Shown: positions 19,845-35,195 of the stretch, one piece after another
How positions within the stretch are numbered: position 1 is the stretch's first letter
Layout: every line of letters begins with the position of its first letter
Assembly: GCF_001194135.2 (NCBI RefSeq)
Contig: NC_068991.1
Location: 45,397,774 to 45,432,968 of the forward strand
Direction: 5' to 3'
Origin: Octopus bimaculoides
Taxonomy: Eukaryota
Length of the DNA: 35,195 nucleotides
Position numbers and translations under genes: made by a program
The notes under the pieces: generated by a model
Databases searched by the model: none
Told to the model about the DNA's origin: nothing
Seen by the model: the letters and a program-made list of their open reading frames with translations, nothing else

Positions 19845-20035
19845 CATTAGACTGTTAGAGTGTGACCATGCTGTGGCATGAAGTAGTTTTAGTCGAATAA
19901 ATTGACCCTAGTACTTATTTATTTTAAGTCAGGTATTTATTCTATTGATTCCTTTTGCCAAACCACTAAGCTGGAGAGATGTGAACACACCAACAGTGGT
20001 GCCAAGCAATGGTCAAACTCAAACACACACACATG

Positions 20036-20098
<63 letters not shown>

Positions 20099-21269: not shown

Positions 21270-21315
21270 GAACTCCAGTGCGCATGCCTGAAATCTAGCG
21301 GGAAATATCAAACAG
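21270..21315 (+). promoter_or_regulatory. Putative promoter: NRF1-like TGCGCATGC (21279-21287) and E2F-like GCGGGAAA (21298-21305)
   Basis: Motifs read directly, in a locally CpG-containing patch about 115-140 bp upstream of the first coding ATG. The motif-to-factor assignment comes from known consensus sequences. Confidence 0.6.
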
Positions 21316-21419
21316 TTTTATTTTTCGTACAGTTTATTAATGTCTTGATGCTTCGTTAATATTTACATTGTACAACACAGACTTGTACATAATTTTTGAC
21401 TCTAGATTGTAGCCCAGTG

Positions 21420-21446
21420 ATGATGGACAGCGAAATGTCGCAGACG
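21420..21446 (+). CDS. Coding exon 1 (MMDSEMSQT) of an acidic, Claspin-like gene
   Basis: ATG ATG GAC AGC GAA ATG TCG CAG ACG|GTATGT. Strong donor, phase 0, matching the next exon. The second ATG has good Kozak context (A at -3, G at +4). Confidence 0.65.
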
Positions 21447-21734
21447 GTATGTATATAGTAATTATATTACATTCATCGATGTCCCGTATTCGTTCTTGTT
21501 GTTTAGCACCAATCCCGTGCCCTTTAAGCATACCTATACTCAAAGGCTCTCTAGCCATGATCATCCCGTCTTTTTAATCGGTATCATGTATTCTAATACT
21601 ACATTATCTGTTGTAATTTTAGATGTCTTTCATTTATTTTTTGGAAGATGGCAGGGGGCAAGTTAGTAAAATCAAAACTGCTATTTCTAGCACGTCGAGT
21701 AACATTGTACAATCTGTTGACGAGTGTTGTTAAT

Positions 21735-22058
21735 CTTTTGGCGACGTATTAATGTTTTTCAATATCTTTCTCTCCCCATAGACACATTTGTCTATTGTAG
21801 GGATTTAAGCCAAAAAAATCGGACTGTCCATATTTTAAACTAATATTTTAAAAAAATTTGTTTTAAATTTCGAAACATTAAAAATTTTTTTCGAACATTT
21901 AAGAAATATTTGTTTTAAATTTCGAAACATTAAAAAAAAAAATGTTTATAATCGTATGAATTCCCGTATGTAGAACACAAATTCACAAAAATTTTCTGAA
22001 AATTCCCCAAAATAAAAGTTTTGAGGGGTTATATGCCATGCATAAAGCAGAATTCCGC
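21735..22058. mobile_element. Truncated MITE-like element, same family as 33554-34031 in the opposite orientation
   Basis: 'gtagaacacaaattcacaaaaattttctgaaaattcccc...gaggggttatatg...gcagaattcc' is the reverse complement of the 33554 left arm. Internal duplication 'atttgttttaaatttcgaaacattaaaaa' occurs twice. Confidence 0.65.
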
Positions 22059-22204
22059 CAATCTTTTTATACACTTACGGTATGTGTGATTTTATCTGTT
22101 TGTCCACACGGGTACTCTTATACAGGTATGCCTTATGTGTGAATTCTGTAATTCTGGACAAAAACAATGACATGCACACATACACACATGTATGTATGTG
22201 TGTA

Positions 22205-22500
22205 GCTTGTTTTAGTCAATGAATTGCGCCCATGCTAGGTGCCCGCCTTGAAGGGTTTAGTCGAACAAATCGATTCCAGAACTTTTTTTCTTCAATCTGG
22301 TGCTTCTTTTGGTCTCTTTCGTTCAACTGCTTGCTTACGGCAATGTGAATAAACTAACTTAGCGGTTCGGCAAAAGAGACCGATAGAATAAGTATTAGGC
22401 TTACAAAAAATAAGCCTTGGGGTCGATTTGCTCGACTAAAAAAGGTGGTGCTCCAGCATGGCCGCAGTCAAATGACTGAAACAAGCAAAAGAGTAAGAGT
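22205..22500. mobile_element. Two SINE-A 3' halves in inverted orientation
   Basis: 22205-22350 is a degenerate minus copy. 22355-22500 is a well-preserved plus copy ending 'gactgaaacaagcaaaagagtaagag'. Confidence 0.7.
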
Positions 22501-22509
22501 ATATATATA

Positions 22510-23121
22510 CAGGGTGCAATGGGTAAATTGTTACTGTTTTATATTTTTAATTTTGCACAGGCACATTGCTTTTGATTTTGTCAACTACACAGTACAGAAG
22601 GGTCAGTTGAGCACCAACTCTGAGAAAAACAGCACCATGACACAGTTCACTCTGCCAGAAATTTGGACACAACATGCTATACTGATTGGCATTGATGCTG
22701 GAAGTTCCAATATGAACATTTCAAAATATTTGGGTGTCAATCTGAGGACATGCACCAAGAGTAATAAAATCAAACATCTAGTCAACATCATGGTGTTTGG
22801 AGTGATCACTAGTGATGGTGATGTTATACCTCCATTCATCTTCCCACACGACCTCTGACTTAACAGGGAGGCCTACATCAAGTGCCTGGAGGAGATAGTG
22901 CTGCCTTGGGTCAAGAGGGTGGCTGCTGGAAGACCCCAATGTCTGGCAACTGGACTCTGCACCATGCCACACAAGCAGGAGAACCCAGTCATGACTGTCA
23001 GACAATTTCTGCGACCACATCACCCCTAACATCTGGCCACCTAACTCCCCAGACTTCAACCTCCATAATTATTATGTGTGGGGCGCAGTTGAGTGAGAGA
23101 CCAATAAAACCCTTTGCAACA
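22510..23121 (+). mobile_element. Internally deleted DD37D (maT-like) Tc1/mariner copy running into an N gap
   Basis: TA|CAGGGTGC terminus. MTQFTLPEIWTQHA...GVNLRT is joined directly to KIKHLVNIMVFGVITSDGDV...WQLDSAPCH...WPPNSPDFNLHNYYVW, with 37 residues between D2 and the (mutated) D3. Confidence 0.85.
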
Positions 23122-24818
23122 NNNNNNNNNNNNNNNNNNNNNNNNNNNNNNNNNNNNNNNNNNNNNNNNNNNNNNNNNNNNNNNNNNNNNNNNNNNNNNN
23201 NNNNNNNNNNNNNNNNNNNNNNNNNNNNNNNNNNNNNNNNNNNNNNNNNNNNNNNNNNNNNNNNNNNNNNNNNNNNNNNNNNNNNNNNNNNNNNNNNNNN
23301 NNNNNNNNNNNNNNNNNNNNNNNNNNNNNNNNNNNNNNNNNNNNNNNNNNNNNNNNNNNNNNNNNNNNNNNNNNNNNNNNNNNNNNNNNNNNNNNNNNNN
23401 NNNNNNNNNNNNNNNNNNNNNNNNNNNNNNNNNNNNNNNNNNNNNNNNNNNNNNNNNNNNNNNNNNNNNNNNNNNNNNNNNNNNNNNNNNNNNNNNNNNN
23501 NNNNNNNNNNNNNNNNNNNNNNNNNNNNNNNNNNNNNNNNNNNNNNNNNNNNNNNNNNNNNNNNNNNNNNNNNNNNNNNNNNNNNNNNNNNNNNNNNNNN
23601 NNNNNNNNNNNNNNNNNNNNNNNNNNNNNNNNNNNNNNNNNNNNNNNNNNNNNNNNNNNNNNNNNNNNNNNNNNNNNNNNNNNNNNNNNNNNNNNNNNNN
23701 NNNNNNNNNNNNNNNNNNNNNNNNNNNNNNNNNNNNNNNNNNNNNNNNNNNNNNNNNNNNNNNNNNNNNNNNNNNNNNNNNNNNNNNNNNNNNNNNNNNN
23801 NNNNNNNNNNNNNNNNNNNNNNNNNNNNNNNNNNNNNNNNNNNNNNNNNNNNNNNNNNNNNNNNNNNNNNNNNNNNNNNNNNNNATATATATATATATTT
23901 ATAAACATAATTAAGGGATCAGCAAACATTTGCTTCACCACATACTGAAGTTCAGAAATAGCAGCTAATACCGAAGGGCTTGGTAAAAATTATTAATTGT
24001 TGATTTATTAATAAATTGATAAACCTTTACCCTTTTAATTATATATATATATATACCTATATATTTTTTATTTATGGGTTAAGGCTACCATTGGTTTTAT
24101 GTTCAGAGAAGTCCCTCAGCAATCGTCAAACCTGTCACATGGAACATCTGTGTTCTTCTCTATTTTGGATTAATCCAATGGTAGCCTTAACCCATAAACA
24201 AATAATTTTTATCCACCATTGTTCAATATTAACATGTGTATATATGTGTGTATGTTTGTGTGTTTTTGGCTGTAAAGTTAGGTAATTGATTCAAGGAGTG
24301 ATGGTTTCATGCATTGCTCTCATATATGCATGTGTGAAACTTGGTACAAAGTCTTTGATGCAGTCTATTAAGTCTCCTCCCACATATCCAACTGATTCAA
24401 AGCTATTTCATACACGCATGGGTTGGACTGGTTTTCTTCAGTACATCATCTCATCACTTATGATCCCTTTGCAATTTCCTTTGTGAGTTTCTGCCTCTTG
24501 AAATCAACTTTTCTCCACTTACGTCTTTTTTGTTTTTCCTATTCTACAGATTCCTTTCACTTGAATCTCTTGACCCTATTTTCATGCAACTCTCATCCTT
24601 TATGCGTATTACATATCTTTCAAACTACAGCCAATTTCTTTCTTATTCTGTTTCTTTCTTAGCTTCTTTGTACTCCTCTCTTCAAGTTTACTGTCATGAT
24701 GCATTCATTGGAGCATAGTTCTCTATTTACTTTCCAGCTTTCACACATCCTCTACACTTATTGCTCATATTTCACTGCAGTAGTGTATTTACTTTTCTTT
24801 TTTTTTAATTTTTTACAG

Positions 24819-24924
24819 CTCATTCTGGGCACTGATATGGAAATGTCCAAGGAAGAAAACAGTGAAAAGGATTCTGGTATTGAAGAAGTTTCACCACAAC
24901 ACAAAACACTATCATTTACTGAAG
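24819..24924 (+). CDS. Coding exon 2 (LILGTDMEMSKEENSEKDSGIEEVSPQHKTLSFTE), Claspin-like
   Basis: Long polypyrimidine tract ...TTTTACAG| acceptor, 106 nt open, GAAG|GTACAT donor, phase 0 to 1. Confidence 0.8.
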
Positions 24925-24959
24925 GTACATTAAATTATTATTGTTATAAGTTAGGGGAA

Positions 24960-25170
24960 AAGGCATTAAGCTAGCTGAATTGTTAAACCATTAGAAGAAA
25001 TACCTTGCAGTATTTCTTCCTCCTCAGAGTTCATTCTGAGTTCAAATCCCACCAAAGCACATTTTACCTTTTATCCTAAAGTCAGAAGCAAAACAGAAAT
25101 TCCCAGTCAAATACTTGGTGTTGGGGTGAGTGGGGGCAATAATTTCGGCTAAACCCTTCCCTCAAAATTG
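24960..25170 (+). mobile_element. Degenerate SINE family B
   Basis: 'aagctagctgaattgtta...ttctGAGTTCAAATcccacc...ttttatcc'. Confidence 0.55.
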
Positions 25171-25439
25171 TGGTCAGTGATCAAATTTGATAGAGTTGTG
25201 GGGAATCTATTCAGTGGTATTTGTAATGTAGGAGACTAGAGGATCATATTATTAACTCCACTCCAGTGTTTCTCAAAGTGGGTGGGGTCTATGAAGATTG
25301 AAAAGTGGGAGTGGACAGATACCCAGGCTTAATAAAGTTATCATACACTGAGTTTTAACCCTAGCTATGCATTATTTTGTTGCTTTGAGATTTCAATGAT
25401 GTAATTGTTTATTTTTAGAATGATATTGTTGGGTAGTCA

Positions 25440-25905
25440 GACCCTGTAGCAAATTCAATAAATGAATTTAGATATGACTTGGAAGAAAGAGTCACCTCGA
25501 GGCATATTACCAAAGATTTGAACAAATTTTTGAAAAAGAATGCCAAAACTGGATGGATGAGATGAAAACTGGTGACACTAGAGCATTAAAATACTGTAAC
25601 TTTATATTGTCTAAAAAAAAGTTTTTGACACAAATTTCATGGACACAATTGATATTTTATGTAGGATGTTGAGAAAAAAAACATTGTTGTTCAACACAAG
25701 TTGGAAGTGTTTGAACACTGAGAAAAACAATGACGAAGATTTTGCCACATATGCAGGTAGAGTGAAGAGAGAGTGTGAGAGATTTAAACTGGATAAACTA
25801 ACCCCAGACTCGTTCAAGTGCCTGATTTTTGCTCAGGGATTTACTGCTAAAAAGGATGCGGAAGTCAGGACAAAAATTCTCACAAAGTTTACATCGCTAG
25901 ACCAT
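25440..25905 (+). mobile_element. Gypsy/Ty3 LTR-retrotransposon gag remnant
   Basis: NSINEFRYDLEE...LLFNTSWKCLNTEKNNDEDFATYAGRVKRECERFKLDKLTPDSFKCLIFAQGFTAKKDAEVRTKIL resembles gag of invertebrate Gypsy (K02A2.6-like) elements. Frameshifted; no LTR or pol recognised. Confidence 0.7.
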
Positions 25906-26118
25906 TGAAAACTCATAATCTGGCACTTTCAGTGCTAGAGGTGGCAGGGATTTATCTCCCTGCTAGTTATATAAACAAGAGTACATTTTGCACCAAAAAG
26001 CCAATGTGAGAGCTTCTCTCATGGAAACTGTTGCAGTATAGTTTGTTCTAAGAGAGCATCCATGTTTAAGTGGGGATAAATATTACCCCTCAGTATTGAA
26101 ACTGTCTTTGTTGCTAAT

Positions 26119-26614
26119 ATCATCATCATCATCATCATCATCGTTTAACGTCCGCTTTCCATGCTAGCATGGGTTGGACGATTTGACTGAGGACTGGTGA
26201 AACCGGATGGCAAGACCAGGCTCCAATCTAATTTGGCAGAGTTTCTACAGCTGGATGCCCTTCCTAACGCCAACCACTCAGAGAGTGTAGTGGGTGCTTT
26301 TACGTGTCACCCGCACGAAAACGGCCACGCTCGAAATGGTGTCTTTTATGTGCCACCCACACAAGCCAGTTCAGGGGCACTGGCAACGATCTCACTCGAA
26401 AATCCTACGGGAGCCAGTCAGGCGGTACTGGCAACGGCCACGCTCAAAATGGTGCATCTCATGTACCACCCGCACAAGAGCCAGTCCAGGGGCACTGGCA
26501 ACGGCCACGCTCAAAATGGTGCATCTGATGTGCCACCCGCACAAGAGCCAGTCCAGGGGCACTGGCAACGATCTTACTTGGCTTGCCGGGTCTTCTCACG
26601 CACAGCACATTTCC
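26119..26614 (-). mobile_element. RTE LINE 3' end: last codons, 3'UTR and (GAT)n tail
   Basis: Minus-strand WKCAVREKTRQAK* followed by a 3'UTR with about 67-bp subrepeats, ending 'gcatggaaagcggacgttaaac(gat)n'. Confidence 0.85.
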
Positions 26615-27289
26615 ATATATATATATATTTATTTATACACACACACACATATCTTAAACAGGCTAACTGGCTAATTGCAACACCAATGCCTGTTCTGGTA
26701 CTGTCAATCTCTATATCGCTGGCAAGGAGGTGAGTCACTGCTGTCTCTAGTGGTTGATGTCTGTCATTAACAACACCAAACAAGGTCAAATGGATGTGAT
26801 CTGGTGGCCTTGGAGCTGGGTGTAGTGGGGGTTCATCTACCTGCAAGTGATAGAAACAAGAGTGCATTTTGCACCAAAAGCCAATATGAGTTTCTCTCAT
26901 GGTAGCTACTGCAGTATAGTGTGTTCCAACAGAACATCCACATTTATGCAGGCATAAATATTACCTTGCAGGATTTGTTCCATCCCTTTGTGTTCTGCAG
27001 TCATCTTTACCTTACACCTTTCAAGATTCATAGAATAAAATACTTGTTAAATATGGATTTTTTCCTTCACTTACAATTTTAGACCTTGTGTCTATAATAG
27101 AAATTATTATTATTATCATAATTTCATGATGCGGTCAAGATGGTGGATGACAGAATTTGTAGAGAACAGGACAAAACATTTTAAGGTTTCTTTTACATAT
27201 ATTCTGAATTCAAATCCAGCCAAAGTCATCTCTATATTTTCTCCTCCTGGTGTTGATTTACTAATTTTCCCCTCATCCAAAATGTTGCA

Positions 27290-27632
27290 TCTTATGTCAT
27301 CATCATTTAACATCTGTTTTCCATGGGTTAGATAGTTTCATTGGGATTGGTAAGCTCGAGAGCTGCATCAGGGTCCAGTCATCTGTGTTGGCTTGGTTTC
27401 TACTGCTGGATGCCCTCCCTAACGCCAACCACTCTACAGAGTGTAGTGGGTGCTTTTTACATGTCACCGGCATTGATATTGATCATGATTCACTCAGCTT
27501 GACGTGTCTTCTCAAGCACAGCAAATCACCAGAAATCTCGGTCACTTGTCATTACTTCAACAACTGAAGATCATATTTCACCACCTTCTTCCACGTCTTC
27601 CTGGATCTATTGCTTCCACAGGTTCCCTCCAC
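27290..27632 (-). mobile_element. Older RTE LINE 3' end
   Basis: Minus-strand VEGTCGSNRSRKTWKKVVKYDL, plus the 'ctggatgccctccctaacgccaaccac' block and a (GAT)n tail. Confidence 0.75.
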
Positions 27633-27910
27633 AATTAGAGATCAGCACAGTCTTAGAAATTTTATTATGTGCAAAGTAATGGCTTGCTTGGCAGAGCATC
27701 AGACAAAATACCTGGTGACAGTTATGTTCTGAGTTCAAATCCTGCTGAAGTTGATAAAATGAACACCATTGGGGATTGATTAAGTCAACTGTGCCTTTCC
27801 CCAATATATTTGCATTAGAAATCTTCATTGTACAACCAATCTTATTAGTTGCATTCAGTGATTGGTCAAGGCATGTCCAAATAAACATTCTACATTTCTT
27901 TTGTTTGTAG

Positions 27911-27960
27911 AGAGCGACAGTGAAGACGATGACTTCTGTGCCAAGTTTTCTCGGAAACAG
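27911..27960 (+). CDS. Coding exon 3 (ESDSEDDDFCAKFSRKQ), Claspin-like
   Basis: TTTCTTTTGTTTGTAG| acceptor, 50 nt, CAG|GTAAAT donor, phase 1 to 0, in frame with exon 2. Confidence 0.8.
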
Positions 27961-27989
27961 GTAAATATTTAAAAAAAATTTTATTTATG

Positions 27990-28285
27990 GTTCCAGATTC
28001 AGTCACATTGTGGCACCTTTGGCACCCCAGACCAACCAAAGCCTTGTGAGTGGATTTGATAGATGGAAACTAAAAGAAGCATGGTTTTGTGTATCTGTAT
28101 GTGTCCTTGTGTTTGTTCCCTACCTTCCACTGCTTGACCACTTGTGTTGGCTTGTTTATGTCCCTGTAACTTAGCGGTTCAGCGAGAGGGACTGATAGAG
28201 TAAGTACCTGTATTTTAAAGGAAATAATATGTACTGGGGTTGATTTGTTCAACTGAAGCTTTCAAGACAGTGCCCCAGCATAGTA
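27990..28285 (+). mobile_element. Degenerate SINE family A
   Basis: 'ccaaagccttgtgagtggatttg...gtccctgtaacttagcggttc'. Confidence 0.7.
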
Positions 28286-28367
28286 TAACCTTTACACTGT
28301 GCTTGAAGTAATTACAAATCATTAAATATGCAAGATGTATTTATTGGTGTAGGAGATCTTCATACAC

Positions 28368-28641
28368 CATCATCATCATCATCGTTTAACGTCCGCTTTC
28401 CATGCTAGCATGGGTTGGACGATTTGACTGAGGACTGGTGAAACCAGATGGCTACACCAGGCTCCAATCTGATTTGGCAGAGTTTCTACAGCTGGATGCC
28501 CTTCCTAACGCCAATCACTCTGAGAGTGTAGTGGGTGCTTTTACGTGCCACCGGCACGAAGGCCAGTCAGGCGGTACTGGCAATGGCCACGCTCAAAATG
28601 GTGTATTTTACGTGCCACCTGCACAGGAGCCAGTTCGGCGG
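28368..28641 (-). mobile_element. RTE LINE 3'UTR fragment (young)
   Basis: Near-identical to 26119-26340 and to the reverse complement of 29668-29924. Confidence 0.85.
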
Positions 28642-29123
28642 CCATTAAATATTATTTAGAGGAAAATAAGATTCAGACACTGTCCACATGAAAAGACCTC
28701 AACTAATATTTTCCTCCTCACAATGCTGACACCAACTTAACTATTTCTTTCTTTTGCAGATAACATCTCTGAATTTTTGAATCTCTAAACATATTGTGGT
28801 CTTTTTTTTTTTCTTTTGTATTTTGTTTAGCTCTGGATAAGATCCGGTCAGTGTTACTCCAGCCATGACCATCTCATGTTTTCTTTTCTCTTTAGACACA
28901 GTTTCTAAGACTACAGTATCTAATATGCCAATGTGTCCTTCCTCACTGTTATCTGAATGAGATTTAGCTGATATTTCTAGCAGATAGGATCACCCATAAG
29001 AAGCCCCTTTTGTTCATAAAGACTAATCACACACTGACATTGATTCAGTTGGCTATGTTCTTTCTCTACCAATTTGTGGCCAACGTGCAAAATCATTTTT
29101 ATAATTTTTATTTTTACACTTAG

Positions 29124-29271
29124 ACTGCTGTTATTAATGATGATGATAGTGATGATGATGACAATGCTGGTGATGGTGATGACAATGCTGCTGTTACTGA
29201 CAATGACGACAATCATAGAAATGCTGTTAGTGAGCCTGTTCGAAACTTACTTCTGCCAGATATTGAATATG
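29124..29271 (+). CDS. Coding exon 4 (TAVINDDDSDDDDNAGDGDDNAAVTDNDDNHRNAVSEPVRNLLLPDIEY), Claspin-like
   Basis: TTTTTATTTTTACACTTAG| acceptor, 148 nt (49 codons + 1) open, TATG|GTAAAT donor. Phase 0 to 1 exactly bridges exons 3 and 5. Confidence 0.8.
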
Positions 29272-29589
29272 GTAAATATATCTTTGCTCTTTTCTGACTC
29301 TCATTTTCTTTCTCACTTTCTCTCTGTTCCCTCTTTCTGCCTTCATTCTTATCATCATTGTTTAATGTCCATTTTCCATGGCATAGGTTGGACAGTTTGG
29401 CAGGAACTGGCCAGTCAGGGAGCTGTCCAGACTGCAATTGTCTGTTGTGGCATGGCTTCTACAGCTGGATGCCTTTCTTAATGCCAATCCCTTCCAATGT
29501 GTTGCAGATGATTGTAAATTCCAGGGTGGCAGCACTAATCAGTGATGTGTATAAATGCAAGATTATTACCAGTTCAAATATACTCCAGG

Positions 29590-29924
29590 CACCTGTGCCC
29601 AGTGTCGCCTTTCTGGCACTTGTGCCCGTGGCATGTGTAAGGACTTTCGACCGAGATCGTTGCCAGTGCCGCTGGACTGGTTCCTGTGCATGTGGCACGT
29701 AAAATACACCATTTTGAGCGTGGCCGTTGCCAGTACCGCCTGACTGGCCTTCGTGCCGGTGGCACGTAAAAGCACCCACTACACTCTTTGAGTGGTTGGC
29801 GTTAGGAAGGGCATCCAGCTGTAGAAACTCTGCCAAATCAGATTGGAGCCTGGTGTAACCATCTGGTTTCACCAGTCCTCAGTCAAATCGAATGGAAAGC
29901 GGACGTTAAATGATGATGATGATG
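29590..29924 (+). mobile_element. RTE LINE 3'UTR fragment (young), plus orientation
   Basis: Ends 'gaaagcggacgttaaatgatgatgatgatg'. It is the reverse complement of 28368-28641. Confidence 0.85.
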
Positions 29925-30033
29925 AAGGTGGTGAGCTGGCACAATTGTTAGCATGCTGAATAAAATGCTTAGCAGAATTTCATCCATCTTTATGTTCTGA
30001 GCTTAAATGCCTCCCATCCTTTTGGGGTCTCAC

Positions 30034-30433
30034 TTTACTTTTTTACTTGTTTCAGTCATTTGACTGTGGCCATGCTGGAGCACCGCCTTTAGTCGAGCAA
30101 ATCAACCCCAGGACTTATTCTTTAGAAGCCTAGTGCTTATTCTATCGGTCTCTTTTGCCGAAATGCTAAGTTACAAGAACGTAAACATACCAGCATCGGT
30201 TGTCAAGCAATGTTGGGGGGACAAACACAGACACAAACATATACACACACACATATGTATACATATATACGACGGGCTTCTTTCAGTTTCCGTATACCAA
30301 ATCCATTCACAAGGCTTTGGTCGGCCCGAGGCTACAGTAGAAGACACTTGTCCAAGGTGCCACGCAGTGCGAATGAACCCGGAGCCATGTGGTTGCTAAG
30401 CAAGCTACTTACCACACAGCCACTCCTGCACCT
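30034..30433 (-). mobile_element. SINE family A, full length
   Basis: Complete head, central microsatellite and 3' block in reverse complement. Confidence 0.9.
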
Positions 30434-31073
30434 CCTGGGTCAATAAAATAAAATACCAGATGGCCACTAGNNNNNNNNNNNNNNNNNNNNNNNNNNNNNN
30501 NNNNNNNNNNNNNNNNNNNNNNNNNNNNNNNNNNNNNNNNNNNNNNNNNNNNNNNNNNNNNNNNNNNNNNNNNNNNNNNNNNNNNNNNNNNNNNNNNNNN
30601 NNNNNNNNNNNNNNNNNNNNNNNNNNNNNNNNNNNNNNNNNNNNNNNNNNNNNNNNNNNNNNNNNNNNNNNNNNNNNNNNNNNNNNNNNNNNNNNNNNNN
30701 NNNNNNNNNNNNNNNNNNNNNNNNNNNNNNNNNNNNNNNNNNNNNNNNNNNNNNNNNNNNNNNNNNNNNNNNNNNNNNNNNNNNNNNNNNNNNNNNNNNN
30801 NNNNNNNNNNNNNNNNNNNNNNNNNNNNNNNNNNNNNNNNNNNNNNNNNNNNNNNNNNNNNCCGATGCTAGTGTGTTTACGTCCTCGTAACTTAGCGGTT
30901 CAGCAAAAGAGACCAATAGAATGTGAGATGGACTTTCGTGGTTGAGGAAATAAGTACCAGTCGAACACTGGGGGCTAATTAAATAAAGCAACTCCCTTCC
31001 CCAAAATTGCAGGCCTTGTTCCTGTTACAGAAAGGATTATTATTATTATTTCTTCCATTTTTTTCTCTCACAG

Positions 31074-31174
31074 GTTCCCTTGAGATATTGGAGAATGAAA
31101 ACCACATTAACAGTGATGATGATGATGATGACGATGACGACGACAAGAAATTTAATATCATCAAACGGAAAAAG
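31074..31174 (+). CDS. Coding exon 5 (GSLEILENENHINSD10KKFNIIKRKK), Claspin-like
   Basis: TTTTTTTCTCTCACAG| acceptor, 101 nt, AAG|GTCAGA donor, phase 1 to 0. Confidence 0.8.
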
Positions 31175-31427
31175 GTCAGAGAGCTTGTATGACTTGTCTT
31201 CTTACATAGGCACAAAGCCACCTGTTTTTAAGGGAGAAAGATTTACTGTTGTTTAAGCTGATATCCTCAGCGAATATCTGCATTTATTTCATTGAGAGTG
31301 GATAGGCAAAGTTTGTACAATCAGTGTTAAGGGTCCATATGAGATTTTGCTATTAAAATTTATCTGCAATAAACTGGTTATGCTTCTATAATGCATGAAA
31401 TATTTTAATTTTTTTTATTCAATTCAT

Positions 31428-31589
31428 AGGTGTAGGTGTGGCTGTGTGATAAGAAGCTTGCTTCCCAACCACATGGTTCTGGGTTCAGTCCCACTGCATG
31501 GCACCTTTGGCAAGTGTCTTCTTTTATTGCCTTGGACTGACCAAAGCCTTGTGAATGGATTTGGTAAACAGAAACTGAATGAAACCTGT

Positions 31590-31623
<34 letters not shown>

Positions 31624-32279
31624 GATACATATGTGTGTATTTGTGTCTGACCCTTGCCACAAACCGGTGTTGGTGTGTTTATGTCCCTGTCACTTAGTGG
31701 TTTGACATAAGAAGCTTGCTTCCCAACCACATGGTTCCGGGTTCAGTCCCANNNNNNNNNNNNNNNNNNNNNNNNNNNNNNNNNNNNNNNNNNNNNNNNN
31801 NNNNNNNNNNNNNNNNNNNNNNNNNNNNNNNNNNNNNNNNNNNNNNNNNNNNNNNNNNNNNNNNNNNNNNNNNNNNNNNNNNNNNNNNNNNNNNNNNNNN
31901 NNNNNNNNNNNNNNNNNNNNNNNNNNNNNNNNNNNNNNNNNNNNNNNNNNNNNNNNNNNNNNNNNNNNNNNNNNNNNNNNNNNNNNNNNNNNNNNNNNNN
32001 NNNNNNNNNNNNNNNNNNNNNNNNNNNNNNNNNNNNNNNNNNNNNNNNNNNNNNNNNNNNNNNNNNNNNNNNNNNNNNNNNNNNNNNNNNNNNNNNNNNN
32101 NNNNNNNNNNNNNNNNNNNNNNNNNNNNNNNNNNNNNNNNNNNNNNNNNNNNNNNNNNNNNNNNNNNNNNNNNNNNNNNNNNNNNNNNNNNNNNNNNNNN
32201 NNNNNNNNNNNNNNNNNNNNNNNNNNNNNNNNNNNNNNNNNNNNNNNNNNNNNNNNNNNNNNNNNNNNNNNNNNNNNNN

Positions 32280-32332
<53 letters not shown>

Positions 32333-32540
32333 ATATGTTTGTGTCTGTGTTTATCCCCCCAACGCACCGATGCTGGTGTGTTTACGTCCCTGTAACTTAG
32401 CGGTTTGGCATAAGAGATCGATAGAATAAGTACTAGGCTTCGAAAGAATAAGTCCTGGGATCGATTTGCTCGACTAAAAGGCGGTGCTCCAGCATGGCCG
32501 CAGTCAAAATGACTGAAACAAGTAAAAGAGTAAAAGAGTT
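31428..32540 (+). mobile_element. Two SINE-A copies: 31428-31705, and a second head at about 31706 whose 3' part reappears after the N gap and ends at 32540
   Basis: Head 'taagaagcttgcttcccaaccacatggttc' at about 31450 and again at about 31709. 3' end 'gactgaaacaagtaaaagagtaaaagag' at 32511-32538. Confidence 0.8.
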
Positions 32541-33042
32541 ATAAAAATATAATATGATTCTTTTAAACAGTGAATGGCTAGGAGGGTCCATCCAGATAAA
32601 ATAGGAAACAAAGGGGTCCATATGCAAAAGATGGTTGAGGAACACTGCCATAAAGACATCCAAGTCTGATGCTGTAATACTTTGCTTCAGACACTATTAT
32701 CCTGTATATCATTATTATCATAATTTATGCAGTTGCTCTTCCATAAGTTGAGACATGGTTGGATGATTTTTATCATTCAGCTTCTAAGGTATCCTCATAT
32801 GACAGACCATCTTGTATTGTCCTGTCTTGCTGCTTTGTTCCTGTGTCTATATGGAACATTTTTATGAAACTGGTGAGGTATATACATCAGTTGGTTTCTA
32901 AATATATAAGCATTTTCCCTGGCATGCTAATGATTCTGCCAGCTTGCTGCTTTTATTACTACTACTATTACCAGCCATAAATGTACATTGATATCTTTAC
33001 TCCATCATTTCCAGCCGTAATTCTTGATCTCTATTTTTCTAG

Positions 33043-33085
33043 ACATCATCACAGAAAAAAGCCAAGAACAGTTTCCATGACAACG
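33043..33085 (+). CDS. Coding exon 6 (TSSQKKAKNSFHDN); the gene continues beyond the window
   Basis: CTCTATTTTTCTAG| acceptor, 43 nt, ACG|GTGAGT consensus donor, phase 0 to 1. Confidence 0.8.
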
Positions 33086-33553
33086 GTGAGTTGATTATGT
33101 TAACCTTGTTGTTGTTAAATGCAATTCTTACATACACAACTTTTTTTTCTTTTTATAATGGTTTGGTTGTTTGATGTTCCAATGGCCTTTACAGGCCTTC
33201 CACAACCTGTCAGATATATGCAGCAGATGTTCTCCTTGATGGTCATATCAAAAGCATGACCATGAATGTAAATTCCAGTGAATAGGGTTCTGGAGGGAAA
33301 GGGCTAGGCAGAATAGTTAATAAGGGCAAGGTGGGATGGAGTGGGAGGAGGAATGCAGCAAGTTGGTAAGGTCTGAATGGAGGTAACAGCCTATAAGCCT
33401 TCTTTGGCAAACAGTGGCAACTTTAGTTGACCTCACGGGGAGACAGCACATCTATGGGCCAAAGTATGGAGTGTGTTGTATAGCTTCAGACACATGTTTG
33501 TTGTTGTGATAAGCTAGTTTCAAGAGTCCTAGAAATGTTAAGGTTTTTTAAGC

Positions 33554-34031
33554 CAGTGGAATTCTGGTTTAAGCATCCCATATGACCCCTTGTAATCTTT
33601 GTATTTTTTGGGAATTTTCAGAAAATTTTTGTGAATTTGTGTTCGACGCACAGGAATTCATATGATTATTAAAAAGAAATTTTTTTTAAGCTCACCCCAC
33701 ATAAATCTTAAAATTTCCAGTCTTTTTTGAATTTTTGTTTTGAAATCAGTTAAAGAATATGGGATTTGATTAAATCTCAGCAATGGACCATTGAATGTGT
33801 TTATGAGGAGAAAGATACTGCAAAACATATAGGTCAGGGTGACAAAGAAACATGGAAGGTATCAGGTGGTTGTGAGATGTGCTAAATCACCCACAAATCA
33901 CACAAAAAATATTTCATTTTGCATAATCATTTTAATTCTGGTGTGTAGAACACAAAATTGCAAAAATTTTCTGAAAATTTCAAAAATCAAAAAGTCGAAG
34001 GGTTAAATGGGTGCTTAAACCAAATTCTGCC
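33554..34031. mobile_element. MITE-like non-autonomous element with about 110-bp imperfect terminal inverted repeats
   Basis: Left arm 'aattctggtttaagcatcccatatgaccc...aattttcagaaaatttttgtgaatttgtgttc...tgatta' aligns to the reverse complement of the right arm at about 33923-34026. Confidence 0.7.
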
Positions 34032-34329
34032 TTTAAGCCTTTAAATCTACTCTTGTAAATTGTTATCTTGTATGAGAGGGTAGATGGTGAAGACAAGAAG
34101 TTATCAGATTACAGCAGACAAGGAACAAAGCAACTGGCATCATCATTTTAGTATCCACTACCATTCTTGCATAAGCGAAACAGAATTTGCTGAAGCTGGA
34201 TGCCCTTCCTGTTGCCAACCTACTTCTTTCCAGGCGAGCTATGTTTTTGCTCAATGTTGAAAATAAAAAACAATGACAATCATTTGCAATTATCACATGA
34301 TGTCAAAACAAAGAGAGACATACACACAC

Positions 34330-34470
34330 ACAGACACATGCATGCTTCTTTTAGTTTCTATCCACAAATCCACTCAAATGGCTTTGAATAGCCTATGACA
34401 GAAGATACTTGCTCAAGGTGCCACACAGTGGGATGAACCCCAGAACCATGTGGTTGAGAAACAAGCACTA
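34330..34470 (-). mobile_element. SINE family A 5' fragment
   Basis: 'caaatccactca...gaagatacttgctcaaggtgccacacagtgg...agaaccatgtggttg'. Confidence 0.7.
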
Positions 34471-34922
34471 CATAAGAATGTTATGAGCAGAAATATGAAT
34501 TTGTGTTCATGTAAACAAATATTTAGCCTTGCTGTGAAGAAAAGGAAATTACACACACCACTTCAAGTTTGTCCAGATTGGTGTATTCTATGAATAACTT
34601 TATACTGCTAGTCTCTATGGGACCAAATTATAATTGATCTTTGGTGATAATGCTTTATCAAAATCTGAAACTGTTCTAATCAACCTCTTCTTCTGACCAC
34701 TGAGAAAGAGTCCTTTCCCCACTGCTTTATTGGTTACTCCTAGTCTTTACCTTTCCACCGAGACTAAATGTGTGTTTACTAAAAAGGCATACTTGTAAAT
34801 TTATTTTACACTTCCATGCCACCATAGATGAGCGTTAAATGATGATATATAGATATATATATTTGACAGGAAGGACAACAAAAGAAAGAAAGAGACCTCG
34901 ATATTATGCAAATAGAGGAATT

Positions 34923-35114
34923 TATCTGTAAAAATATGTGACACTTATTCAGTAGCCATGATAAAACTCCAAGTTTCGGATGCCAGGGTGGGAGCCCACG
35001 CCAACATCTCTTCAGTTTTCTGGCCAATTGAAAATTCCTGTGAAAAATGACTGGCATCCGAAACTCGGAGTTTTATCATGGCTACTGAATAAGTGTCACA
35101 TATTTTTACAGATA
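34923..35114. mobile_element. Young 192-bp foldback/MITE: 64-bp arms with one mismatch and a 64-bp spacer
   Basis: 34923-34986 equals the reverse complement of 35051-35114 except one A/G position. The outermost bases on each side are TA. Confidence 0.8.
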
Positions 35115-35127
35115 TATATATATGAAC

Positions 35128-35195
35128 ATTGGGCCTCACCGAGGCGATGACTACTGACCGAGACCTTTGGAAATGTGCTGTGCGTGAGAAGACCC
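35128..35195 (+). mobile_element. RTE LINE 3' end, running off the window
   Basis: Translates LGLTEAMTTDRDLWKCAVREKT, the same C-terminus as the 26574-26614 copy. Confidence 0.8.

What the first reader, a model, noticed from the sequence alone, without database searches (positions are those of the whole stretch)
21420..33085. Six-exon gene missed by the ORF track, with a Claspin-like N-terminus
Seen: six exons with canonical AG/GT sites whose phases chain exactly (0, 0-1, 1-0, 0-1, 1-0, 0-1) into one open frame: MMDSEMSQT-LILGTDMEMSKEENSEKDSGIEEVSPQHKTLSFTE-ESDSEDDDFCAKFSRKQ-TAVINDDDSDDDD...PDIEY-GSLEILENENHINSD10KKFNIIKRKK-TSSQKKAKNSFHDN. Known, from memory: human Claspin begins with a DSGQGS degron followed by [25 protein letters not shown]. 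My recollection, which needs checking, is that it also has a short first exon of about 8 codons and a phase-1 intron just before the acidic motif. Inference: this is the Claspin ortholog. The similarity is low-complexity, so the name is a hypothesis while the gene itself is well supported.
Basis: partly seen in the sequence, partly recalled or inferred. Interest (0 to 1): 0.7.

Follow-up and report, generated by a model that had tools for sequence, protein, structure and literature searches.

The report
Octopus Claspin gene's missing 5′ end
The six exons are real and form the beginning of the octopus Claspin gene (a replication-fork and checkpoint protein); public annotation splits it off as a separate, misnamed small gene because an assembly gap interrupts the locus, so this is an annotation repair and not new biology.

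Summary
Six exons (27, 106, 50, 148, 101 and 43 nt) with AG/GT sites chain in phase into a 158-aa peptide. The three N-gaps lie inside introns 1, 4 and 5, at least 212 nt from any exon.

The window is Octopus bimaculoides chromosome CM046611.1. The peptide is 100% identical to two public models, XP_014775358.1 ("protein PFC0760c", 164 aa) and A0A0L8H534 (179 aa). They end in different short terminal exons.

The Claspin reading is supported.
- About 6 kb downstream on the same strand, beyond a 1338-N gap that starts where the window ends, lies XP_014775357.1 "claspin". It is 5′-truncated and starts at an internal Met.
- An older model starts exactly at the gap edge and matches human CLASPIN (E=1.7e-19).
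- A profile of nine mollusc Claspin N-termini aligns collinearly with the peptide at 22.9 bits. None of 5000 shuffles reached that score; hhalign gives E=8.7e-5.
- The first three introns match gastropod and bivalve Claspin genes in position and phase. The first two also match a bird gene.

The exon(s) carrying the DLFDAE/DEGFD motifs are missing, presumably in the gap. No transcript data could be checked. The result is ordinary: a known gene split by an assembly gap.

The parts
21298..21305 (-). E2F-type site TTTCCCGC (read GCGGGAAA on the + strand), 115 nt upstream of the ATG; a possible cell-cycle promoter element
   Evidence: It is the only TTTSSCGC match in the 35-kb window (1.25 expected per window). 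That it works as a promoter element is inference.
21420..21446 (+). Coding exon 1, 27 nt, phase 0>0, MMDSEMSQT
   Evidence: an in-frame stop lies at 21390-21392; the donor is CG|GTATGT. The length equals the 27-nt first coding exon of Gigantopelta claspin; Sinanodonta has 30 nt and the bird 21 nt.
24819..24924 (+). Exon 2, 106 nt, phase 0>1; carries SEKDSGIEEVSP, the beta-TrCP-degron-like DSG motif at aa 27-29
   Evidence: It aligns to EK-x-DSGM[DE][DE] of mollusc claspins, where DSG lies at aa 24-35 in 8 of 9. The orthologous exon has the same 0>1 phases in Gigantopelta, Sinanodonta and the bird.
27911..27960 (+). Exon 3, 50 nt, phase 1>0; (E)SDSEDDDFCAKFSRKQ, the first half of the acidic-basic-acidic motif
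   Evidence: Orthologous exons of 53-62 nt with phases 1>0 occur in Haliotis, Gigantopelta and Sinanodonta.
29124..29271 (+). Exon 4, 148 nt, phase 0>1; TAVINDDDSDDDD..., the second half of the motif followed by an acidic linker
   Evidence: The phase-0 intron that splits the motif between K-K-K/Q and hydrophobic-hydrophobic-DDDD is shared with all three mollusc genes. Haliotis has a 144-nt exon here.
31074..31174 (+). Exon 5, 101 nt, phase 1>0; (G)SLEILENENHINS-D10-KKFNIIKRKK
   Evidence: It aligns to EEVLDAIL...acidic...KKNTIKRKK of mollusc claspins. The phase-0 intron after KRKK is shared with Gigantopelta and Haliotis.
33043..33085 (+). Exon 6, 43 nt, phase 0>1; TSSQKKAKNSFHDN; the last exon with good support inside the window
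   Evidence: Donor CG|GTGAGT, acceptor tract 85% pyrimidine. No specific similarity to relatives was found for this exon.
33195..33259 (+). Terminal exon of the UniProt model A0A0L8H534 (...GLPQPVRYMQQMFSLMVISKA*); probably a prediction artefact
   Evidence: Acceptor tract only 60% pyrimidine. It has no counterpart in the relatives examined and differs from the RefSeq terminal exon.
33750..33769 (+). Terminal exon of the RefSeq model XP_014775358.1 (...VKEYGI*); probably a prediction artefact or a minor alternative 3' end
   Evidence: Acceptor tract 60% pyrimidine; ATTAAA at 33769.
33086..35195 (+). Intron 6, open-ended: it runs to the end of the window, where a 1338-N gap begins. The claspin exons resume beyond the gap at window-equivalent 36535-36567, 37404-37500, 38823-38946 and 39856-40905.
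   Evidence: No convincing phase-1 exon and no DLFDAE/DEGFD motif were found in the sequenced DNA here.

Best explanation
The six exons are the 5' end of the single Octopus bimaculoides Claspin (CLSPN/Mrc1) gene.

Structure of the locus. Transcription probably starts shortly upstream of 21420. The six exons encode the disordered N-terminal regulatory region. The gene continues through a 1338-N assembly gap that begins where the window ends. That gap probably hides the exon(s) carrying the DLFDAE and DEGFD motifs and the start of the ...LTAKLKAKLKK exon. Beyond the gap come the exons for the TIMELESS-binding site, the MCM-binding helices, the Chk1-binding LCSGQF motif and the conserved C-terminal region. 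Gene predictors could not bridge the gap. They closed the upstream piece with an invented terminal exon ('protein PFC0760c', 164 aa) and restarted the downstream piece at an internal Met ('claspin', 1087 aa).

How the in-window part likely works (inferred from the family, not shown here). DSGIEE at aa 27-32 would be a beta-TrCP phosphodegron controlling Claspin turnover at mitotic entry and checkpoint recovery. In molluscs the second phosphoserine position is replaced by an acidic residue. The acidic-basic-acidic motif and the basic KRKK runs belong to the charged N-terminal segment. In human Claspin that segment takes part in an intramolecular interaction with the C-terminal acidic patch.
For: 1. 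Identity and place. The window is 100% identical to CM046611.1 of GCA_001194135.2. The peptide equals XP_014775358.1 and A0A0L8H534 over all 158 aa.

2. Neighbour. The next called gene on the same strand is XP_014775357.1 'claspin'. It starts at an internal Met inside a 1050-nt exon that opens upstream at an acceptor in phase 2. The older model P0003 begins at the first base after the gap. It matches human CLASPIN 7PFO_Q at E=1.7e-19: octopus residues 8-75 align to human 266-330, which include TIMELESS site 1 (residues 284-319 per PMC8634136), and octopus 389-551 align to human 513-669.

3. The downstream protein is a Claspin. 486 hits at E<=1e-3 were found, and the best full-length ones are named claspins of molluscs and vertebrates. 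It carries one LCSGQF motif.

4. N-terminal homology. An HMM of nine mollusc Claspin N-termini gives 22.9 bits in one collinear domain, octopus 15-147 against profile 14-129.
   - 0 of 2000 global shuffles reached that score (maximum 7.9).
   - 0 of 1000 local shuffles reached it at each of three window sizes (maximum 14.8).
   - The reversed sequence scores 3.5.
   - The listed top-scoring exon orders all keep exons 2-3-4 in order.
   - hhalign gives E=8.7e-5, octopus 24-77 against profile 25-76.

5. Gene structure, as nt and phases.
   - Octopus: 27(0>0), 106(0>1), 50(1>0), 148(0>1), 101(1>0).
   - Gigantopelta: 27(0>0), 82(0>1), 62(1>0), 61(0>1) ... 74(1>0).
   - Sinanodonta: 30, 94(0>1), 53(1>0), 55(0>1).
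   - Haliotis: 151(0>1), 59(1>0), 144.
   - Bird: 21(0>0), 142(0>1), then phase-1 entry.
   - After the gap the octopus exons (..>0), 97(0>1), 124(1>2) match (..>0), 94-100(0>1), 118(1>2) in all three molluscs.

6. Length. Molluscs have 189-275 aa upstream of HSE[ST]QR. The octopus has 158 + about 33 + the gap content.
Against: - No transcript evidence could be consulted, so the physical link across the gap is inferred.
- Two annotation pipelines each end the upstream model with a stop codon inside the window.
- Exon 6 leaves in phase 1, whereas the corresponding Gigantopelta exon leaves in phase 0. The exon 4/5 boundary is phase 1, against phase 0 in Haliotis. Conservation is therefore not perfect after intron 3.
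- The peptide is strongly low-complexity (HMMER bias term 33.6 bits). It has no Pfam hit. Alone it finds nothing in the PDB set containing human CLASPIN.
- No other cephalopod protein matching the six-exon peptide was retrieved. The only other cephalopod-like sequence found covers just the large downstream exon (P0004).
Confidence: 0.9

Rival explanations
1. The six exons plus a short terminal exon form an independent small gene, as in RefSeq and UniProt. It would encode a 164-179-aa acidic protein unrelated in function to the neighbouring claspin gene.
For: Two public models close the reading frame inside the window. ATTAAA lies at 33769 and AATAAA at 34262.
Against: - The two models use different terminal exons, both with weak acceptors (60% pyrimidine, against 75-90% for exons 2-6).
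- Neither terminal exon has a counterpart in the relatives examined.
- The peptide has the motifs, their order, their distance from the N-terminus and the intron phases of Claspin N-termini.
- The neighbouring claspin model lacks exactly this part.
Confidence: 0.05
2. The locus makes both products: full-length Claspin, and a short N-terminal-only isoform produced by alternative termination in intron 6.
For: The same public models as above. Poly(A)-like signals lie downstream of both terminal exons.
Against: No evidence for expression was available. The terminal exons are short, have weak acceptors and could not be shown to be conserved.
Confidence: 0.04
3. The chain is a chance alignment of open segments and splice-like sites in low-complexity, GAT-rich DNA and is not a gene.
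For: Exon-like segments at the same thresholds are common: 20 on the + strand and 12 on the - strand. GAT-type repeats give long chance ORFs elsewhere in the window.
Against: - The profile score exceeds all 5000 shuffles.
- The first three intron positions and phases are shared with the mollusc genes, and the first two also with the bird gene.
- The chain lies directly upstream of a 5'-truncated claspin model.
Confidence: 0.01

Closest known systems
Claspin (CLSPN) of metazoa, ortholog of fungal Mrc1; closest sequenced relatives are the mollusc claspins of Haliotis, Gigantopelta, Sinanodonta, Mizuhopecten and Patella
   Same: - The N-terminal motif order is the same: DSG motif near aa 27, then an acidic-basic-acidic motif, then EEVLDAIL-like...KRKK.
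- The first three introns agree in position and phase.
- Beyond the gap the octopus has the [17 protein letters not shown] TIMELESS site, regions aligning to the human MCM-binding helices, an LCSGQF Chk1-binding motif and the conserved C-terminus.
   Different: - The octopus reads DSGIEEVS; other molluscs read DSGM[DE][DE] and vertebrates DSGQGS.
- Only one LCSGxF motif is in the current octopus model, against two in other molluscs and three in the bird.
- The DLFDAE/DEGFD exons are not in the sequenced DNA.
- No Pfam family matched any of the octopus models, so the fungal Mrc1-like family PF09444 is not hit.
RefSeq XP_014775358.1 / UniProt A0A0L8H534 ('protein PFC0760c', uncharacterized protein) of O. 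bimaculoides
   Same: Identical over all 158 residues and all six exons.
   Different: These models add 6 or 21 residues from two different terminal exons and treat the piece as a whole gene. From my own knowledge, not tested here, the name PFC0760c comes from a Plasmodium falciparum low-complexity protein and so reflects composition, not ancestry.

Membership tests
Claspin/Mrc1 | TIMELESS/Tof1-binding site 1: helix plus LPYH plus a short hydrophobic helix (human 284-319) | tested here: met
   The post-gap exons read [35 protein letters not shown]. They align to human 266-330 within an overall E=1.7e-19 (site defined in PMC8634136). This lies outside the window, on the same strand 2.2-3.8 kb beyond its end.
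Claspin/Mrc1 | MCM6- and MCM2/TIMELESS-binding helices (human 525-540 and 592-618) | tested here: met
   P0003 residues 389-551 align to human 513-669. Outside the window.
Claspin/Mrc1 | Chk1-binding repeats ExxxLC(S/T)GxF | tested here: met
   There is one copy, MDDVIGLCSGQFAE, at residue 676 of XP_014775357.1. Other molluscs have two and the bird three. Outside the window.
Claspin/Mrc1 | Conserved C-terminal region (Mrc1-like, histone-binding part) | tested here: met
   Residues about 650-1086 of XP_014775357.1 align to the C-termini of named claspins at E down to 6e-101. No Pfam family matched, so PF09444 is not hit; that model is annotated among fungi (PMC11380579).
Claspin/Mrc1 | N-terminal beta-TrCP degron DSGxxS near residue 30 | tested here: inconclusive
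   DSG is at aa 27-29, against human 29-31, but the sequence is DSGIEEVS: Glu stands at the second phospho-position and the next Ser is at +7 from the Asp (+6 from the first Ser). Eight of nine mollusc claspins have DSGM[DE][DE/G] at aa 24-35. Binding to beta-TrCP is not testable here.
Claspin/Mrc1 | N-terminal acidic-basic-acidic motif after the degron (human [25 protein letters not shown]) | tested here: met
   The octopus reads ESDSEDDDFCAKFSRKQTAVINDDDSDDDD. hhalign against the mollusc profile gives E=8.7e-5 and the HMM gives 22.9 bits, above all shuffles. The human sequence was read from 7PFO_Q.
Claspin/Mrc1 | Shared intron positions and phases at the 5' end of the gene | tested here: met
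   Introns 1-3 agree with Gigantopelta and Sinanodonta. Introns 2-3 agree with Haliotis. Introns 1-2 agree with the bird. The three introns after the gap agree with all three molluscs. Later in-window introns agree only in part.
Claspin/Mrc1 | The six exons and the Claspin body lie on one transcript | not testable with these tools
   This needs RNA-seq or cDNA, or a gap-closed assembly. It is inferred from adjacency, shared strand, the complementary truncations and the relatives' gene structure.

The most novel reading that the evidence does not exclude
Besides full-length Claspin, the locus really produces the annotated 164-179-aa product by terminating in intron 6. This would be a free N-terminal fragment carrying the DSG degron-like motif and the acidic-basic-acidic motif, but none of the replisome- or Chk1-binding parts. 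Such a fragment could compete for beta-TrCP or for whatever binds the N-terminal motifs.
Probability: 0.05. Interest if true: 0.4.

Novelty: already known. Interest (0 to 1): 0.13.

Why it matters
The value is practical. Two O. bimaculoides gene models, XP_014775358.1 'protein PFC0760c' and XP_014775357.1 'claspin', should be merged into one Claspin gene. The 1338-N gap after window position 35195 should hold the missing DLFDAE/DEGFD exon(s).

The result also documents two things. The extreme 5' architecture of CLSPN is shared from molluscs to birds: a 7-10-codon first exon, then a degron exon, then a phase-1 intron. And mollusc claspins carry an acidic variant of the degron, DSG[MI][DE][DE].

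None of this changes what is known about Claspin.

Tried and rejected
- Searching the 158-aa peptide in the 5.8-billion-protein set returned only its own cluster. No other cephalopod ortholog of the N-terminus could be retrieved. The second search found only the octopus model and one exon-sized Logan fragment.
- Pfam gave nothing meaningful for the peptide, P0003 or P0005.
- The peptide alone and the mollusc N-terminal profile find nothing in the PDB sequences, which include human CLASPIN.
- Look-ups of the Mizuhopecten protein and of bird isoform X2 failed. Haliotis, Gigantopelta, Sinanodonta and bird isoform X1 worked.
- A scan of 33086-35195 for a further phase-1 exon with good splice sites gave only an implausible hydrophobic segment.
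- A motif scan for DLFD/EGFD between exon 6 and the GATKQ exon found nothing credible.
- Independent small gene: considered and rejected as the main reading.
- Chance ORF chain: rejected.
- Duplicated 5' fragment with the true 5' end hidden in the gap: the nominal gap of 1.3 kb is too small for six exons with introns, but gap sizes are estimates.
- No tRNA-like elements are in the window.

Full report
WHAT IS THERE

The window is eukaryotic, AT-rich and broken by ten N-runs. The exon edges were then read directly:
- 21420-21446, 27 nt
- 24819-24924, 106 nt
- 27911-27960, 50 nt
- 29124-29271, 148 nt
- 31074-31174, 101 nt
- 33043-33085, 43 nt

Each internal exon is preceded by AG and each exon is followed by GT. 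The phases run 0>0, 0>1, 1>0, 0>1, 1>0, 0>1. The joined 475 nt give a 158-aa peptide without a stop. The ATG at 21420 is the first in frame after a stop at 21390-21392.

THE GAPS

The three N-runs inside the finding lie in introns 1, 4 and 5. The closest exon edge is 212 nt away, so no splice site or codon depends on unread sequence. The same N-runs are in the public chromosome record. A hidden exon with a length that is a multiple of three cannot be excluded from sequence alone. The mollusc Claspin genes show no exon at the places corresponding to introns 1 and 5. Haliotis spans the intron-4 region with one 144-nt exon, much like the octopus 148-nt exon 4.

IS IT MORE THAN CHANCE?

All six donors match at least 6 of 8 consensus positions, which 5.4% of GTs in the window do. 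Four of five acceptors have at least 80% pyrimidines, which 1.6% of AGs do. The same thresholds still yield 20 exon-like segments on the + strand and 12 on the - strand. Exons 4 and 5 are partly GAT-repeat coding, and such repeats make long chance ORFs elsewhere in the window. On pattern alone the chain is only moderately convincing. The case rests on what follows.

WHERE IT COMES FROM AND WHAT IS ALREADY ANNOTATED

The peptide is 100% identical over its full length to two Octopus bimaculoides models:
- XP_014775358.1, 'protein PFC0760c', 164 aa
- UniProt A0A0L8H534, 179 aa

The encoding locus L001 (CM046611.1 of GCA_001194135.2) is base-for-base identical to the window, with window coordinate = L001 coordinate + 11419. 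The gene was therefore not missed by public annotation.

The two models end differently. RefSeq adds VKEYGI* from 33750-33769. UniProt adds 21 residues from 33195-33259. Both terminal exons have weaker acceptors, 60% pyrimidine. The window ends exactly where a 1338-N gap begins.

THE NEIGHBOUR

The next called gene on the same strand is XP_014775357.1 'claspin', 1087 aa. Its start is an internal Met within a 1050-nt exon, which opens upstream at an acceptor in phase 2.

An older model (P0003, 562 aa) begins at the very first base after the gap. It reads LTAKLKAKLKK | [33 protein letters not shown] | [11 protein letters not shown].... It matches human CLASPIN (PDB 7PFO chain Q) at E=1.7e-19:
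- Octopus 8-75 align to human 266-330. This includes TIMELESS-binding site 1, defined as residues 284-319 in PMC8634136.
- Octopus 389-551 align to human 513-669, covering the MCM6 and MCM2 sites.

A full HMMER scan with the 1087-aa protein found 486 relatives at E<=1e-3. The best full-length ones are named claspins of Sinanodonta, Mizuhopecten, Patella, Haliotis, Gigantopelta, Physella and Plakobranchus, and of vertebrates. The protein has one Chk1-binding-type motif, MDDVIGLCSGQFAE.

The downstream gene is therefore a true Claspin that lacks its N-terminus. Human Claspin has about 265 residues before site 1, and molluscs have 189-275.

DOES THE SIX-EXON PEPTIDE BELONG TO IT? TWO INDEPENDENT TESTS

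1. Sequence. An HMM was built from the N-termini of nine mollusc claspins, cut 35 residues before HSE[ST]QR so that nothing matching the post-gap exons was included.
   - It aligns the octopus peptide in one collinear domain, octopus 15-147 to profile 14-129, at 22.9 bits.
   - 0 of 2000 global shuffles reached this score (maximum 7.9).
   - 0 of 1000 local shuffles reached it at each window size of 8, 12 and 20 residues (maximum 14.8).
   - The reversed peptide scores 3.5.
   - Among the 720 exon orders the native one ranks 21st, and the listed top-scoring orders all keep exons 2-3-4 in order.
   - hhalign gives E=8.7e-5 for octopus 24-77 against profile 25-76, that is at the same distance from the N-terminus.
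   - Three motifs are shared, in this order: SEKDSGIEEVS with EK-x-DSGM[DE][DE]; ESDSEDDDFCAKFSRKQTAVINDDDSDDDD with SDSDDE-x-V-I-x-K-x-x-KK-x-x-I-L-DDDD; and SLEILENE...D10KKFNIIKRKK with EEVLDAIL...KKNTIKRKK.

2. Gene structure. The N-terminal exons of four Claspin genes were mapped exactly onto their genomic loci.
   - Gigantopelta: 27(0>0), 82(0>1, DSG), 62(1>0), 61(0>1), ..., 74(1>0, ends KKNTIKRK), ..., 107(1>0, ends RLKAKLLKMK), 100(0>1), 118(1>2).
   - Sinanodonta: 30, 94(0>1), 53(1>0), 55(0>1), ..., 107(1>0), 94(0>1), 118(1>2).
   - Haliotis: 151(0>1), 59(1>0), 144, 70, 80(1>0), ..., 140(1>0), 100(0>1), 118(1>2).
   - Bird (Lagopus): 21(0>0), 142(0>1, DSGQGS), then phase-1 entry into DSEEEIFVSRKAKGKKVLQDSESED.
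   - Octopus: 27(0>0), 106(0>1), 50(1>0), 148(0>1), 101(1>0), 43(0>1), gap, (..>0), 97(0>1), 124(1>2).
   - The first three introns agree with the molluscs in position and phase, the first two also with the bird, and the three after the gap agree again.
   - The intron that splits the acidic-basic-acidic motif is shared by all four mollusc genes. This directly supports the exon 3/4 junction.
   - Agreement is imperfect later. The exon 4/5 junction is phase 1, against phase 0 in Haliotis. Exon 6 leaves in phase 1, against phase 0 in Gigantopelta.

WHAT IS MISSING

Mollusc claspins have DLFDAE and DEGFD motifs between the KRKK exon and the ...LKAKLKK exon. Neither motif occurs in any frame of the sequenced DNA between exon 6 and the GATKQ exon. 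No credible phase-1 exon lies in 33086-35195. The simplest reading is that these exons sit in the gap.

- The human degron DSGQGS at aa 29-34 is confirmed by PMC6721324.
- The human sequence [41 protein letters not shown] was read from the PDB chain.
- The short first exon and the phase-1 intron before the acidic motif are confirmed in a bird and in molluscs. Human was not checked.

HOW IT LIKELY WORKS (INFERENCE FROM THE FAMILY)

The in-window exons encode a disordered regulatory head.
- A beta-TrCP degron-like DSGIEE lies at the conserved position. In molluscs an acidic residue replaces the second phosphoserine.
- Charged motifs follow. They belong to the N-terminal segment that in human Claspin interacts with the C-terminal acidic patch and masks DNA and PCNA binding (PMC4945878).
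- The only E2F-type site in the window lies 115 nt upstream of the ATG. From my own knowledge, CLSPN is an S-phase, E2F-regulated gene, so this fits. It is weak evidence.

VERDICT

The result is ordinary: a known gene whose 5' end was split off and misnamed because of an assembly gap.

I put 0.9 on the merged-gene reading. The remainder is shared between an independent small gene, a genuine short isoform, and chance.

Noticed in passing
window 22750-23121 (+) and 722-1092 (-): Two decayed copies of one Tc1/mariner-like transposon, 85% identical over 375 nt. The first lies in intron 1 and is cut by the gap. A stitched translation with stops and frameshifts matches Pfam DDE_3 at E=1.9e-5 (25 bits, below the 28.6 cut-off).
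   Followed up: partly
window 26120-26319 / 28360-28560; 28420-28642 / 29668-29890; 30253-30433 / 31428-31608; 19887-20089 / 32280-32479: Pairs of about 200-nt interspersed repeats, 79-96% identical, lie mostly inside the introns of the gene. The first pair is direct and the other three are inverted. No tRNA-like part was detected.
   Followed up: partly
window 1827-5374: Very long trinucleotide-type arrays give poly-Asp/Glu/Ser 'ORFs' of up to 693 aa running across an N-gap. Nothing here suggests a gene. They show how easily acidic open frames arise by chance in this genome.
   Followed up: no
window 24897-24920 (exon 2, aa 27-34); mollusc claspins P0006-P0016: Eight of nine mollusc claspins read DSGM[DE][DE/G] at aa 24-35, and the octopus reads DSGIEE, where vertebrates read DSGQGS. 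An acidic residue stands at the second phosphoserine position of the beta-TrCP degron. Solemya lacks DSG altogether.
   Followed up: partly
window 21298-21305 (-): The only TTTSSCGC (E2F-type) match in the window lies 115 nt upstream of the start codon.
   Followed up: partly
L001 28437-29486 and XP_014775357.1: The RefSeq claspin model has one LCSGxF Chk1-binding motif where other molluscs have two. Its sequence around residues 470-500 (VCTNSFPFFSFSALFVPCYPWLSRPK) looks unlike the acidic region of the relatives at that place. The downstream model may therefore have further local errors.
   Followed up: no
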